This document shows, piece by piece, positions 20,521 to 24,096 of a DNA stretch of 64,000 nucleotides. Every line of letters starts with the position of its first letter. Position 1 is the stretch's first letter. Both the position numbers and the translations under genes were made by a program. Location: positions 1 to 64,000 of IMG/VR virus record IMGVR_UViG_3300047319_001872; one strand, 5' to 3'. The notes under the pieces were generated by a model. The model did no database searches, was not told where the DNA came from, and saw nothing but the letters and a program-made list of their open reading frames with translations.

Positions 20521-21948
20521 TTAGGCAGTTGCGGCCGCTTCTTGCGCTTCTTCTTCCTCGCCCTCCAACTCGCCCATCAATTCGAGCCACTTGTTGGAGA
20601 TCACCTTGAACGACTGGCCTGTCTCGTGATTCTTCATCACTAGTCCTTCGCGCAACGTCGGCTTCGGATCAGACGGCGACGTCGCCAGCAGTGCCGACTT
20701 ACCGTCGGCGAGCTTGAGCAACTCGTTCATGTCCGCAGGCAACTTGATACGGGCCAGCTTCGGATCAACCGGGATGTAATCCAAACCCAAGTAAGCGGCG
20801 ATTGCCTTGGTTTCATCCGGCGTGAATCGGTAGGTCCCATTGCCGTAGGCGCGATACACGTAGAAGCGGTTTTCGGCCAGCTTTTCAGCATTGCCGTTGA
20901 ACTTCGGTCCGACCATCTCGCCTTGAATCGCCACGATCTTGCCGTGAGCGAATGCCAGCCCAATCCCCTTAGCAATCGACACGTCCATCATCAGCGCTCG
21001 ATTGAGCGCTTTCAGATTCTGCACGATACCTTGGTTGAGCATCCAGCGCACCAACGGCACCCCCGTCGGATCGAAGCCCTTCTTCCAGCGCGGCACCTCG
21101 CACTCACCACCGCGCAAGCGCCGTGGCACGAAACGCATCCAGTCCGACACATAGACCTTGAACGATTCCTTGCGGGTGTAGGGGACAAACTCGGTGCGCA
21201 GCGACCAGTTGCGTTGAGCCAGGCCGATGTCGCCGGTATCCAGATCCTGGTAGGCCATGGCGGATTCACCATCGAGCTTGACTGAACCTTCCCAGTCATC
21301 GCCTTCCTTGACGAGCCTGTCGTATTCCTTTTTCAGGTTCTGGACACGCTCTTCATCGGACTTCACATGCCCACGCGGGAAGTCTTGCAGGCCGTCGACC
21401 AAAATGCCGTCGATCAACTTCATGCGCAGCTTCCACCACCAGCTCTTGGTCTGTCGCCCGCGCTCGCCTGCTTCTTCTGCCAGACGGCGCAGGTACAGTT
21501 TGTACTCGACCGGATTCACGTACTTGAGAATCTCGAGCTCCTGCGTGACGTTGGCTTCCTCTTCACCCTGCGCAGTGGCAGTGGCGATCTTGAGCAAAGC
21601 CGGAATGCTTTCGAGATTCTTCAGCTGCATGAGCAGACCCTGCGAGCGCACGCCGCGCAGCTTGAGGGTCTTGATCACGGCGTATTCCTTCCCGCCGTTT
21701 TCCGTGTCTTGCCGGATCAGCAGGTAGCGCTTGTCGAAGTCACCCCACACTGGGCTATCCAACGGAACCGCCGCGTCGATCTCGAAGTAGACAGCAAAGT
21801 CCCCGACCTTGTACAGTTCCTTCTGGACCACACATTCCCACCCCCCAACGACCGCAATTTCCAGACGGTCGGCTTTCTTGATCGGCTTGATCTCATCGAT
21901 CTTGACGATACGGGCGAGCGCCCGCGTTTCTTCTTTTACGAACGGCAT
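20521..21948 (-). CDS. ATP-dependent RNA ligase (Rnl2-superfamily, DRB0094-like, N-terminal OB-like domain)
   Basis: Nucleotidyltransferase motifs I KLDG, III IQGEMVG, IV REGLVMK and V SFKVIS; N-terminal ADRLEIAVVGGWECVV. Confidence 0.88.
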   Translation of the reverse strand: MPFVKEETRALARIVKIDEIKPIKKADRLEIAVVGGWECVVQKELYKVGDFAVYFEIDAAVPLDSPVWGDFDKRYLLIRQDTENGGKEYAVIKTLKLRGVRSQGLLMQLKNLESIPALLKIATATAQGEEEANVTQELEILKYVNPVEYKLYLRRLAEEAGERGRQTKSWWWKLRMKLIDGILVDGLQDFPRGHVKSDEERVQNLKKEYDRLVKEGDDWEGSVKLDGESAMAYQDLDTGDIGLAQRNWSLRTEFVPYTRKESFKVYVSDWMRFVPRRLRGGECEVPRWKKGFDPTGVPLVRWMLNQGIVQNLKALNRALMMDVSIAKGIGLAFAHGKIVAIQGEMVGPKFNGNAEKLAENRFYVYRAYGNGTYRFTPDETKAIAAYLGLDYIPVDPKLARIKLPADMNELLKLADGKSALLATSPSDPKPTLREGLVMKNHETGQSFKVISNKWLELMGELEGEEEEAQEAAATA

Positions 21949-21959
21949 TGTAATTCTCT

Positions 21960-22361
21960 TTAGATAAGTACGTCGCGAATAAACGGAACGCGAAAGCGCG
22001 CCTGCTCTTTAAGCCAAGCGCGGGTCTGCCAGTAGTCCTTGTGCCAGATCGAATCAATCTTACAATCGTGATCGAGGCTCAAGGTAAAGCCAAACTCGTC
22101 CCCCGTCGCTAACACAAAGACGAGGTGGTAGCCGGGCCGCCCGCTTGGGTTCCACCATTCGTCCTGCTGATCAATGATGGCAGGCGTGAAGCACCAGGCG
22201 GCGGCTTGCACGCCACAATCAAAGGACAGGCGCAGTCGCTGCAGGGTGCGCAGATACCCCATCTGAATCTCGAGCATCATGCAGTTATACGTTGCTTCGT
22301 CACGCGCGTGGTGATGCAAGAACAACTGCAAACGAGTATCGAGATTAAGATGACGTGGCAT
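21960..22361 (-). CDS. hypothetical protein (133 aa)
   Basis: ORF track; tiles between neighbours. Confidence 0.6.
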   Translation of the reverse strand: MPRHLNLDTRLQLFLHHHARDEATYNCMMLEIQMGYLRTLQRLRLSFDCGVQAAAWCFTPAIIDQQDEWWNPSGRPGYHLVFVLATGDEFGFTLSLDHDCKIDSIWHKDYWQTRAWLKEQARFRVPFIRDVLI

Positions 22362-22911
22362 CAGGGAGCTCCGGTTTCGGAAAATGATCTTTGGTTATTT
22401 CACCCATTAACTTCACTCTCCATCCCATCGACTCTAGGTGAGCTTTTGCATGGTGAATGAATAGTAATCGGTGACAGAACACCCCAGCCGGGCAGTAGCA
22501 CCCATACGCTGCGTACGGATACACGGAGAGGCGATCCCACGCCGCTCGATGCATGTCACGCGACTCCACCATCTTGTCTTCGTAGAGTTCCGTGTAGCTC
22601 TGCTCGTTTAAGCGCCCGTCCTTGTACGCCTTTACATTCTCCCAATCCGGTGCAAACGCCAGGACCCCTGACTTGGCGGTGGTGTCAATCAGTTTAATGT
22701 GATCGACATCCCGACCTATCAGGTAAGGGGTTTCAGCCCCAGACGGGTCGGCGGTAGCCGGTGATGGGGTCGATGACGTCGTGCTTGACGTTGCCGAATC
22801 CGAGGGTAGGGTCGACGACGCCGTCGGGGTTGACGTCGACTCGGCGCTCGATGTCGCGCTTCGTGCGCGCAGCAGCCTGTGCTGCCCAAGCTGAATTGTC
22901 CAGAGAAAGAA
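22345..22911 (-). CDS. DUF488-like protein with a 52-aa low-complexity insert; start unresolved
   Basis: DTTAKSG..FAPDW..V..YK.G.L.E..YTELY and CYCPAGVFCHRLL resemble DUF488/YeaO-like phage proteins; no ATG near the apparent N-terminus. Confidence 0.6.
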   Translation of the reverse strand, partial: FFLWTIQLGQHRLLRARSATSSAESTSTPTASSTLPSDSATSSTTSSTPSPATADPSGAETPYLIGRDVDHIKLIDTTAKSGVLAFAPDWENVKAYKDGRLNEQSYTELYEDKMVESRDMHRAAWDRLSVYPYAAYGCYCPAGVFCHRLLFIHHAKAHLESMGWRVKLMGEITKDHFPKPELPDATSS

Positions 22912-23506
22912 CTGCGGGGTAGGACTTGGGGATGCTGGTGTGTCGGTAGACGAGATGGCGGATGCGTCCACAGGTCGGACCTCCCGTACGGTAGTTAAGG
23001 GATTCCCAGTCCGTGCGCTCGAGCACGTAACCGTTCGCGTCCAGCGACTCCTCATCGAAGAGGACATTGCCGACGACTGCACCGTCGGGCGCCTTCTGGT
23101 TAAAGAGCTGCGCGACGTGGATGCGACTCACGAAGCCCGTGAGGCTCGGAGTGTTACTGCGCTGCACCAGCCGGTGGATCGCACCGTGCTGATAGTCGAC
23201 CAGCCAGTGTTGGGTTTCGAGATTGGACACTTCGCCCAGATAGAGCTGGTTGTCTTCGCGATAGGCGTTGATCAAATCCGTGCTCAGCTGACCGTTGTGG
23301 TCAATCAGGTGGGAAATAGCCTGCGTCGCATTACAGGCGCTATACGCCTCTTCTGCGCAATGCAGCACCTGACCCTGCAAGATGTTCTTCAGACGGCTCA
23401 GAGAGTGGTTTAAGAGCGCCGGAGCACCATCCTTGTACACGGGGCGACCCGCTTGGTCCAAAGTGATGATCAACTGCACGTTTTCTTTGCGGTTTTGTTC
23501 TTTCAT
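22733..23506 (-). CDS. degenerate DHFR-fold protein with a C-terminal extension
   Basis: Pattern LIITLD..G....DG..P...L.RLK.IL.G.V and later SRIHVAQL parallels DHFR strands; catalytic and NADPH-binding motifs (IGxxxxLPW, MGRKT, GG) are not intact. Confidence 0.5.
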   Translation of the reverse strand: MKEQNRKENVQLIITLDQAGRPVYKDGAPALLNHSLSRLKNILQGQVLHCAEEAYSACNATQAISHLIDHNGQLSTDLINAYREDNQLYLGEVSNLETQHWLVDYQHGAIHRLVQRSNTPSLTGFVSRIHVAQLFNQKAPDGAVVGNVLFDEESLDANGYVLERTDWESLNYRTGGPTCGRIRHLVYRHTSIPKSYPAVLSLDNSAWAAQAAARTKRDIERRVDVNPDGVVDPTLGFGNVKHDVIDPITGYRRPVWG

Positions 23507-23545
23507 GGTCCCTGCAACAACAAAAAAATAAGATGTCACAAACTC

Positions 23546-23570
23546 CCAGAGGCCGAAACCCCTGGGAGTA
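23546..23570 (-). terminator. hairpin with T-run
   Basis: CTCCCAG...CTGGGAG stem at about 23544-23569; TTTTTTT downstream on the minus strand. Confidence 0.45.
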
Positions 23571-23610
23571 TTCCTCAGCAACTGCCCCCGTAAACGGATG
23601 CGGAGCTGGC

Positions 23611-24096
23611 TTAGTCGCTCAGCGCCGACGCGGCGATGTCCGTCAGGTGATCACGCACCTTCTTGAATTCGCCACGCGATTGCGAACCGCCGTAGAAGTC
23701 GAGCTTCAGCGAGCCGGTGCCGAACTTGGTGGTCGGCTCTTGGCCCGGTGCGCGCACTTGCGACGAACGCTCGAAAACGCCTTCGAACTTCGACTTGCCG
23801 ACCGTCGGGAACGTGGCCGTCACTTCGTTCACGCTCTTGTGCTTCTTGAAGAAGTCGACGCCGGTTTCGCCGAGTGCCAGGAACGATGCGGCAGCGAAAC
23901 GCGTGTTGTGGTTGTCGATCGCGAGCACGGTGTCGGCGCTCACGCCTTCGGGCAGCAGTTCGACGTACACGCCCTTCAGCTTTTCCGGATCGGCGAGGCC
24001 GGTCTTCGGATCGATGTGGATGTGCTTCTTGATCTTGTCGGCCAGTTCACGCGTTTCCGGCTTGAAGACGATGGATTCTTTAACAGTCGTGGTCAT
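23611..24096 (-). CDS. conserved, highly expressed hypothetical protein (161 aa)
   Basis: AAGGA SD; very strong codon bias. Confidence 0.8.
   Translation of the reverse strand: MTTTVKESIVFKPETRELADKIKKHIHIDPKTGLADPEKLKGVYVELLPEGVSADTVLAIDNHNTRFAAASFLALGETGVDFFKKHKSVNEVTATFPTVGKSKFEGVFERSSQVRAPGQEPTTKFGTGSLKLDFYGGSQSRGEFKKVRDHLTDIAASALSD

What the first reader, a model, noticed from the sequence alone, without database searches (positions are those of the whole stretch)
22345..22960. DHFR-like and DUF488-like genes with coding signal alternating between two frames around a 156-nt insert
Seen (minus strand): frame A (DHFR-like) has phage-typical C/G-ending codons until about 22915. It then has atypical A/T-ending codons over 22861-22911, where frame B reads FFLWTIQLGQHRLLRAR. 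Frame A becomes typical again over 22733-22860 (KRDIERRVDV...PVWG*), where frame B is Ser/Thr-rich shadow sequence. Frame B then continues as DHIKLIDTTAKSG...CYC...CHR. Removing exactly 22705-22860 (156 nt, 52 codons) joins LWTIQLGQHRLLRAR to DHIKLIDTTAKSG, which matches my recollection of the compact N-terminus of jumbo-phage DUF488-like proteins. The insert ends carry a 7-bp inverted repeat (CGACATC / GATGTCG). Frame B has no nearby ATG. Inference: alternatives are programmed frameshifting, an excisable RNA insert (an RNA ligase gene lies about 400 bp downstream), a recent insertion tolerated in both frames, or assembly indels.
Basis: partly seen in the sequence, partly recalled or inferred. 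Interest (0 to 1): 0.62.

Follow-up and report, generated by a model that had tools for sequence, protein, structure and literature searches.

The report
Two phage genes interleaved by overlap
In a group of soil jumbo phages, a DUF488-type gene starts at a hidden GTG inside the gene before it and shares about 240 bases with that gene in another reading frame, so its odd look needs no frameshift or splicing, and gene finders cut it short.

Summary
On the minus strand, purifying selection alternates between two frames: A, then B, then A, then B.

The frame-B peptide FFLWTIQLGQHRLL is the true N-terminal strand and helix of the DUF488-N3a-like family. Relatives in other jumbo phages lack the roughly 50-codon insert.

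GGAGG (22980-22984), an 8-nt spacer and GTG (22969-22971) open frame B inside gene A. That site carries GTG, TTG or ATG in 10 of 11 related sequences. The eleventh has moved its start 7 codons upstream, with its own GGGAG.

- Gene B is 22345-22971, 208 aa. It overlaps gene A (22733-23506, 257 aa, probably DHFR fold) by 239 nt in the +1 frame.
- The "insert" is the +1-frame shadow of A's C-terminal tail.
- It stays stop-free in every lineage.
- A's tail codons end in C far more often than elsewhere in the gene, which rules out stops in frame B and yields Ser/Pro/Thr/Ala.
- AlphaFold predicts the insert as a disordered loop.

Assembly error is refuted. Frameshifting and RNA excision are unnecessary and unsupported: there is no conserved slippery site or RNA structure, and the 7-bp inverted repeat is lost in a 97%-identical relative.

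This is a long, conserved, interleaved gene overlap that annotation pipelines truncate. Expression is untested.

The parts
22733..23506 (-). Gene A, 257 aa. Probable DHFR-fold body (about residues 1-189) plus a 68-residue C-terminal tail that runs through the 5' part of gene B.
   Evidence: ORF. Homologues P0001-P0010 and FLC9 gp33. AlphaFold pLDDT 53, with top Foldseek hits all DHFR. No Pfam, PHROG or Atlas hit.
22980..22984 (-). GGAGG, the Shine-Dalgarno sequence for gene B. It lies inside gene A, where frame A reads Gly-Gly.
   Evidence: Invariant in 11 of 11 sequences, although GGA is the rarest Gly codon here (6%). Other genes in the window carry AGGAG, GGAG or GAGG 5-9 nt before their ATG.
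22969..22971 (-). GTG start codon of gene B, 8 nt after the GGAGG.
   Evidence: At this site: GTG in 7 sequences, TTG in 2, ATG in 1. The frame-A residue there varies (Cys, Leu, Asn). L106 lost the site but has an ATG 7 codons upstream with its own GGGAG.
22345..22971 (-). Gene B, 208 aa, a DUF488-N3a-like protein. It overlaps gene A by 239 nt in the +1 frame.
   Evidence: Pfam PF22751 at 20.6 bits, below the cut-off of 27. Aligned homologues score 41.7 and 37.9 bits. phrog_2450 E 2e-20. AlphaFold pLDDT 83.6.
22912..22968 (-). N-terminal extension of B (19 codons after the start). It overlaps the last strand of A's fold. Frame A dominates selection here.
   Evidence: Frame A 13 synonymous / 27 non-synonymous against frame B 8 / 34. 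Variable and Pro-rich in frame B.
22870..22911 (-). B1 core: 14 codons for strand 1 and the start of helix 1 of the DUF488 fold. Frame B dominates selection here.
   Evidence: Frame B 15 synonymous / 0 non-synonymous; frame A 0 / 16. Aligns to the N-terminus of 30 or more homologues. pLDDT 89-97.
22736..22869 (-). A2: the C-terminal tail of A (frame A selected). In frame B it forms the Ser/Thr/Pro/Ala-rich linker.
   Evidence: Window against L009: frame A 5 synonymous / 1 non-synonymous, frame B 1 / 6. 78% of A codons end in C, against 41% in the body of A. Frame B is open with chance probability 0.057. pLDDT below 60 in the model of B.
22705..22732 (-). Stretch after A's stop codon that codes only for the end of B's linker.
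   Evidence: The distance from A's stop to the conserved I-K-L-I codon (34 nt in the window, so it reaches 6 nt past this part) takes five values across lineages: 4, 10, 28, 31 and 34 nt. All are 1 mod 3.
22348..22704 (-). B2: the rest of the DUF488-like domain, with the C-Y-C ... F-C-H-R motif.
   Evidence: Alignment A3 has C158, C160, H167 and R168 invariant. pLDDT 96-98.
22720..22755 (-). 36-nt indel polymorphism. The deletion removes A's stop and last residues and takes 12 residues from B's linker, in frame for both genes.
   Evidence: Deleted in L008/L025. Contigs of run X7 break exactly at 22719 and 22754.
22850..22856 (-). The 3' arm is 22704-22710.
   Evidence: Present in the window. 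The 97%-identical relative L009 has only 5 bp; the other lineages have 5-6 bp. MFE z-scores run from -1.6 to +0.3. Judged to be chance.

Best explanation
These are two separately translated genes with a long out-of-frame overlap.

Gene A (23506..22733) has a probable DHFR fold and carries a C-terminal tail.

Gene B (22971..22345) is DUF488-N3a-like. It starts inside A at a GTG, 8 nt after a GGAGG, in the +1 frame. Ribosomes that start there read a short extension, then B's ancient first strand and helix. They then read straight through the +1 shadow of A's tail, which forms a 45-50 residue disordered linker rich in Ser, Thr, Pro and Ala. Finally they read the rest of the domain.

Selection alternates because each stretch matters to only one of the two proteins. 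A's tail keeps frame B open by using codons that end in C. This puts C at B's second codon position, which can never give a stop and always gives Ser, Pro, Thr or Ala.

Shown: both frames are selected, the start site is conserved, frame B is open, and the insert is modelled as a loop.

Inferred: initiation actually occurs at the GTG, the linker stays in the protein, and the biochemical roles of A and B.
For: 1. Homology. B's embedded peptide aligns with the N-terminus of the family in other jumbo phages. Those proteins start M-x-x-[YWF]-T-[IV]-Q and have no insert.

2. Selection. B1 core: frame B 15 synonymous / 0 non-synonymous, frame A 0 / 16. A tail: frame A 32 / 87 against frame B 16 / 94. 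In the closest pair, frame A 5 / 1 against frame B 1 / 6.

3. Start site. GGAGG plus 8 nt plus NTG occurs in 10 of 11 sequences, as GTG, TTG or ATG, while the frame-A residue changes between Cys, Leu and Asn. GGA is fixed although it makes up only 6% of Gly codons. L106 moved the start 7 codons upstream, with a new GGGAG. Genes in the window use similar Shine-Dalgarno motifs.

4. Frame B is open through the tail in all lineages. Chance probabilities are 0.016-0.90 per lineage, with a product near 1e-6 if the lineages are treated as independent. Tail codons end in C in 64% of cases against 40% in the body of A (Fisher 3e-19).

5. AlphaFold model of the 208-aa protein: pLDDT 83.6. Residues 20-44 pack confidently onto the core and 45-88 are disordered.

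6. The sequence is confirmed by independent contigs and by the isolate phage FLC9.

7. In L011 a homing-endonuclease cassette supplies a second 5' part of B with an ordinary ATG and a 13-residue linker. So B works as a free-standing protein.
Against: - There are no expression data. No RNA run holds this DNA.
- GGAGG is not by itself a strong predictor of gene starts in this genome: 6 of 55 copies precede an ORF of 60 aa or more.
- The window's B scores below Pfam's cut-off (20.6 against 27 bits).
- The lineages are related, so the pooled statistics overstate independence.
- Selection on A's tail is modest in the distant pairs.
Confidence: 0.8

Rival explanations
1. Programmed +1 ribosomal frameshifting from A into B, near the C-rich run at about 22915 or at a CTT-T site. 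It would give a DHFR-like/DUF488 fusion alongside A.
For: B is in the +1 frame of A. CCC-G and CTT-T motifs lie just before the B1 core in the window and in FLC9. The window has no ATG for B.
Against: A conserved Shine-Dalgarno sequence plus start codon explains entry into frame B. The candidate slip sites are not conserved: L014 has no CCC-G, and CTT-T follows simply from coding Phe-Phe. There is no stop or rare codon and no correctly spaced stimulator. Homologues and the L011 second copy are free-standing proteins.
Confidence: 0.05
2. The roughly 156-nt insert is removed from B's message or skipped by the ribosome. This would be an RNA excision sealed by the nearby RNA ligase, or a gene-60-type bypass, joining ...RLLRAR to DHIKL...
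For: Homologues lack the insert. A 7-bp inverted repeat sits at the insert's ends. An RNA ligase gene lies two genes downstream, and immediately downstream of B in most relatives.
Against: Frame B is stop-free through the insert in all 10 lineages, and codon choice is biased to keep it so. Excision would not require that. The inverted repeat is lost in a 97%-identical relative and there is no fold signal. Rfam finds no family. No stop follows a take-off codon and no matching take-off and landing codons were seen. The insert models as a tolerated loop.
Confidence: 0.03
3. The embedded N-terminal piece is a dead relic. The real B is the short ORF that gene callers report (78-107 aa, starting at an internal ATG after A's stop).
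For: FLC9 gp32 is annotated as 88 aa, and metagenome gene calls give 78-107 aa.
Against: The relic would not show 15 synonymous and 0 non-synonymous changes, nor a conserved start site. The short form would lack strands 1 and 2 and helix 1 of the fold.
Confidence: 0.02
4. A sequencing or assembly indel splits one simple ORF.
For: Homopolymer runs (CCCC, GGGG) lie near the switch points.
Against: The same layout appears in the isolate genome FLC9 and in 9 further independent assemblies. Contigs from other samples match the window with no differences across both runs.
Confidence: 0.01

Closest known systems
Out-of-frame overlapping genes (overprinting) in viruses, for example phiX174 A/B/K and D/E and other phage and RNA-virus overlaps (own knowledge; reviewed in PMC8227390, found; only its title and abstract were seen)
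   Same: Two proteins are read from one stretch of DNA in different frames. Each has its own start. One frame dominates selection at any given place. The subordinate frame yields low-complexity, disordered sequence.
   Different: Neither partner here is a young, wholly embedded gene. The overlap joins the tail of one old-fold protein to the 5' part of another, and dominance switches twice (A, B, A, B). A conserved domain of B is therefore physically split by A's tail. The setting is a 313-kb dsDNA phage, where space is not tight.
DUF488-N3a family (Pfam PF22751) proteins of jumbo phages, for example those of Xanthomonas phage RTH11, Pseudomonas phage Noxifer and Vibrio phage BONAISHI
   Same: Same domain, same invariant C-x-C and C-H-R residues, and same N-terminal strand motif.
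   Different: Those proteins are 108-156 aa. They start with Met 3-4 residues before the strand and have no insert. The window's protein has a 20-residue extension and an insert of about 50 residues, and it starts at a GTG inside the upstream gene.
prfB-type +1 programmed frameshifting and T4 gene 60 translational bypassing (own knowledge)
   Same: A coding signal that changes frame or jumps a gap. In prfB an internal Shine-Dalgarno-like element lies nearby.
   Different: Here the Shine-Dalgarno sequence is followed at start-codon spacing by a conserved NTG. There is no shift site, and the gap is kept translatable.
Free-standing GIY-YIG homing endonuclease cassettes next to phage genes (own knowledge for the T4 examples such as mobE and segA-G)
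   Same: In relatives L010/L011 a GIY-YIG gene sits in B and brings a replacement 5' part of the target gene. L032 has a homologous endonuclease directly upstream of its B gene.
   Different: The window itself carries no endonuclease. This shows only that B is a recurrent homing target and that it works without the overlap.

Membership tests
DUF488-N3a (PF22751), gene B | Match to the family profile at or above the gathering score | tested here: inconclusive
   Window B scores 20.6-21.8 bits against a cut-off of 27 and covers profile positions 41-109 of 118. Aligned homologues L040 and L041 score 41.7 and 37.9 bits.
DUF488-N3a (PF22751), gene B | Conserved C-x-C and C-H-R residues, and the N-terminal strand shared with the phage subfamily | tested here: met
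   Alignment A3: C158, C160, H167 and R168 are invariant; T25 is conserved in 90% or more. The model packs residues 20-44 onto the core with pLDDT 89-97.
Dihydrofolate reductase fold, gene A | Sequence-profile match to DHFR | tested here: not met
   No Pfam, PHROG or Atlas hit.
Dihydrofolate reductase fold, gene A | Structural similarity to solved DHFRs | tested here: inconclusive
   All top Foldseek hits are DHFRs (E 3e-4 to 4e-3, TM by target 0.4-0.5). However, the model has pLDDT 53 and rmsd is 7-10 A. Catalytic and NADPH-binding residues were not examined.
Out-of-frame overlapping gene pair | Both frames open, and each under purifying selection somewhere in the overlap | tested here: met
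   (B1 core: frame B 15/0; A tail: frame A 32/87 against frame B 16/94; close pair 5/1 against 1/6)..
Out-of-frame overlapping gene pair | An independent translation start for the second gene | tested here: met
   Conserved GGAGG plus 8 nt plus GTG, TTG or ATG, and a compensating relocation in L006-type lineage L106. Use of the site in vivo was not tested.
Programmed +1 frameshift (prfB or antizyme type) | Conserved slippery codon with a slow or stop codon in the A site and a stimulator at fixed spacing | tested here: not met
   No motif is shared by all lineages between the end of A's fold and the B1 core. There is no in-frame stop in that region.
Translational bypass (T4 gene 60 type) or small RNA intron | Conserved RNA structure, a stop after the take-off codon, and no need for an open frame in the gap | tested here: not met
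   MFE z-scores from -1.6 to +0.3, and the inverted repeat is not conserved. No Rfam family. The gap is kept open.

The most novel reading that the evidence does not exclude
Although the linker is translatable, the mature DUF488-like protein might lack it, or be made in two forms. Possible routes are ribosomal hopping, RNA processing tied to the syntenic RNA ligase, or a low-level +1 shift that fuses the DHFR-like body to the DUF488 domain. The overlap would then act as a regulatory switch between products.
Probability: 0.05. Interest if true: 0.8.

Novelty: new variant of a known kind. Interest (0 to 1): 0.4.

Why it matters
It corrects the annotation of a conserved jumbo-phage gene. FLC9 gp32 and every automatic call seen in the relatives with called genes give a 78-107 aa fragment that lacks three core structural elements.

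It is also a clean natural example of how two old protein folds can come to share DNA. Dominance of selection switches twice within 240 nt. One gene's tail is lodged in a loop of the other. A simple codon rule, C at the third position of one frame, keeps the second frame open and harmless.

The clade offers 10 diverged versions, with overlaps of 155-272 nt. It also offers a natural control: an endonuclease cassette that restores a non-overlapped start. This makes it useful for studying how overlaps arise and are maintained.

It warns against invoking recoding when a non-ATG start has not been ruled out.

Tried and rejected
- **Frameshift sites.** I first favoured CCC-G and CTT-T as +1 slip sites because both occur in the window and in FLC9. 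I dropped this when L014 lacked CCC-G, and when frame-B synonymous changes extended upstream of them.
- **Inverted repeat and RNA fold of the insert.** Not conserved, and no z-score signal.
- **Rfam scan of 21500-24000.** Only a chance snoRNA-like hit, at E 0.24.
- **Promoter and terminator scan.** Nothing lies between A and B.
- **Metagenome scan with the A alignment.** No loci found.
- **Sequence-family and Atlas searches for A.** Blank.
- **Foldseek of the B model against PDB.** No match at E <= 0.001. The wide VIA search gave only the RapZ C-terminal domain (Z 6.9) and dual-specificity phosphatases (Z about 3), too weak to name a fold.
- **Search of the genome for another protein ending in A's C-terminal motif.** None found.
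- **RNA evidence.** No RNA run holds the stretch.
- **Literature.** Searches for DUF488 in phages and for overlaps in jumbo phages found nothing on this locus.

Full report
**Setting.** The window is the first 64 kb of a 313,315-bp IMG/VR phage genome with terminal repeats and 56% G+C. It recurs in rhizosphere and soil metagenomes. Its only cultured relative in the phage collection is Burkholderia phage FLC9, at about 76% nucleotide identity over part of the region. The local gene order is conserved in all relatives: Peptidase_S80 prohead protease, two unknown genes, gene A, gene B, RNA ligase.

**Check of the observation.** On the minus strand, frame A is open from the ATG at 23506 to the TGA at 22733 (257 aa). 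Frame B is +1 relative to A and open from 23082 to 22345.
- Third-position G+C in frame A runs 0.72, then 0.42 over 22920-22861, then 0.90 over 22860-22736.
- Frame B reads 0.70 over the middle stretch and 0.61 over 22704-22348.

**Homology of the embedded peptide.** A tblastn search with B's downstream part finds 63 phage records, nearly all jumbo phages.
- Their proteins start with Met 3-4 residues before a [YWF]-T-[IV]-Q strand. After about 12 more residues they run straight into the I-x-L-[IV]-D-T-T-x-K-S-G strand.
- The window and FLC9 have the same two elements separated by about 50 extra codons.
- A 37-sequence alignment confirms this.
- Clear members of this set pass the Pfam gathering score for DUF488-N3a (41.7 and 37.9 bits). 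The window's protein scores 20.6.

**Both frames are selected, in alternation.** I collected ten diverged versions of the locus: FLC9; IMG/VR loci L009, L011, L012 and L014; and metagenome contigs L105-L110. In four independent pairs:
- The 14 codons of the B1 core show 15 synonymous and 0 non-synonymous differences in frame B, and 0 and 16 in frame A.
- The stretch after it (A's tail) shows 32/87 in frame A against 16/94 in frame B.
- In the closest pair (window against L009), the tail has 5/1 in frame A and 1/6 in frame B.

So A is translated through B's first strand, and B's first strand is translated in its own frame.

**How frame B is entered.** Frame B has no ATG nearby. However, GGAGG at 22980-22984 is followed after 8 nt by GTG at 22969-22971, in frame B.
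- The block GGAGG-N-CCGACC is invariant at A's synonymous sites in the first five sequences compared; in the later contigs only GGAGG is invariant. GGA is the rarest Gly codon of the genome, at 6%.
- At the start position, seven sequences have GTG, two have TTG and one has ATG. A's residue there changes between Cys, Leu and Asn.
- The one exception, L106, has TCG there. It has gained an ATG 7 codons upstream, preceded at 7 nt by GGGAG, which a silent GAA-to-GAG change in A created.
- In three sequences this NTG is the only start codon in the open part of frame B.
- Ordinary genes in the window carry AGGAG, GGAG or GAGG 5-9 nt before their starts.

This is the signature of a conserved, independent initiation site. 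Gene B is thus 22971..22345, 208 aa, and overlaps A by 239 nt. The overlap is 155-272 nt in the relatives.

**Is the insert read or removed?** Frame B is stop-free through A's tail in every lineage.
- I resampled synonymous codons for A's tail using the window's codon usage. The chance of an open +1 frame is 0.057 for the window, 0.016 for L110 and 0.21-0.90 for the others. The product is near 1e-6 if the lineages are treated as independent, which overstates it.
- The cause is visible. 64% of tail codons end in C, against 40% in A's body (Fisher 3e-19, pooled). In the window the figures are 78% and 41%, and all seven Val codons are GTC.
- A C at A's third position is a C at B's second position. 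That excludes stop codons and yields only Ser, Pro, Thr or Ala, which explains the 'shadow' composition.
- Excision or hopping would not need any of this.
- The inverted repeat is reduced to 5 bp in the 97%-identical L009. The insert shows no folding signal (z from -1.6 to +0.3). Rfam finds nothing.
- The distance from A's stop to the conserved I-K-L-I codon takes five values (4-34 nt), all 1 mod 3. That fits either model.
- A 36-nt deletion variant (22720-22755) exists in L008. It coincides exactly with contig breaks in an independent sample. It stays in frame for B and replaces A's last residues.

**Structure.** AlphaFold on the 208-aa protein with the 37-row alignment gives pLDDT 83.6 and pTM 0.72.
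- Residues 20-27 form strand 1 and residues 28-44 a helix (block mean pLDDT 97 for 21-30 and 89 for 31-40; the end of the helix is lower).
- Residues 45-88 are disordered.
- Residues 90-200 score 96-98.

The insert therefore sits in a loop between helix 1 and strand 2, where extra residues are tolerated.

**Assembly error.** This is excluded. Contigs from other samples cover 22300-22962, 22366-22877 and 22848-23041 with no differences, including both homopolymer runs. The layout also recurs in FLC9 and nine other assemblies.

**Gene A.** No sequence family matches. The AlphaFold model is poor (pLDDT 53), yet its sheet core is modelled at 70-80 and every top Foldseek hit is a dihydrofolate reductase (E from 3e-4, TM by target 0.4-0.5).
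- The fold ends near residue 189, exactly where selection passes from frame A to frame B.
- The 68-residue tail is an appendage whose end varies among lineages. Most end in T-G-[YL]-R-[RK]-P-x-W, two end in Y-F-x-Q-L-x-x-L-R, and one is short.

**A natural control.** In L010/L011 a GIY-YIG endonuclease gene (Pfam 25.4 bits) is inserted after B's second strand.
- It brings a second copy of B's 5' part with an ordinary ATG and a 13-residue linker.
- The embedded copy remains upstream as an orphan.
- A homologous endonuclease lies directly upstream of B in an unrelated 144-kb phage contig (L032).

So B functions as a free-standing protein, and the overlap is a feature of this clade's gene arrangement, not of the protein.

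**Conclusion.** The finding is a real, conserved, interleaved overlap of two genes. Entry into frame B is by an internal Shine-Dalgarno sequence and GTG start. Recoding and RNA processing are not needed and are not supported, though only expression data can exclude them fully. Automatic annotation truncates B in every relative where called genes were seen (88 aa in FLC9, 78-107 aa elsewhere). I estimate 0.8 for this model. Biochemical function remains inferred from family membership only.

Noticed in passing
L011:2151-2987 (also L010); second 5' part of B at L011:2917-3372: A GIY-YIG homing endonuclease cassette is inserted in gene B of a 310-kb relative. It duplicates B's 5' part and supplies an ATG start and a short linker. 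The endonuclease's 3' end overlaps the new B start in the same relative frame as A does in the window.
   Followed up: partly
L032:535-1845: In an unrelated 144-kb phage contig, a homologous GIY-YIG endonuclease is in the same open frame as, and directly upstream of, a DUF488-like gene. Erwinia phage records also show 'GIY-YIG' annotations under the match (hits H10, H27). The gene seems to be a recurrent homing target.
   Followed up: no
window 22720-22755: A 36-nt deletion polymorphism is seen in contig L008 and as contig breaks in run X7. It removes A's stop and conserved end but keeps both frames.
   Followed up: partly
window 21960-22361 (-): A 133-aa ORF with no family match. Its ATG overlaps B's end by 17 nt. 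It is present in the window, L008 and L011. It is absent from FLC9, L106, L107, L109 and L110, where the RNA ligase follows B directly.
   Followed up: no
window, whole 64 kb: GGAGG occurs 55 times on both strands, against about 178 expected from base composition. Only 6 copies precede an ORF of 60 aa or more.
   Followed up: no
L057:1468-1953: The Erwinia-phage-type homologue also has a Ser/Thr-rich N-terminal extension of about 20 residues before the first strand. This hints at a similar upstream overlap in another clade.
   Followed up: no
window 22733-22760 (-); alignment A4: A's C-terminal motif T-G-[YL]-R-[RK]-P-x-W is conserved in most lineages but replaced by two other endings in the rest. 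No other protein of the genome ends this way.
   Followed up: partly
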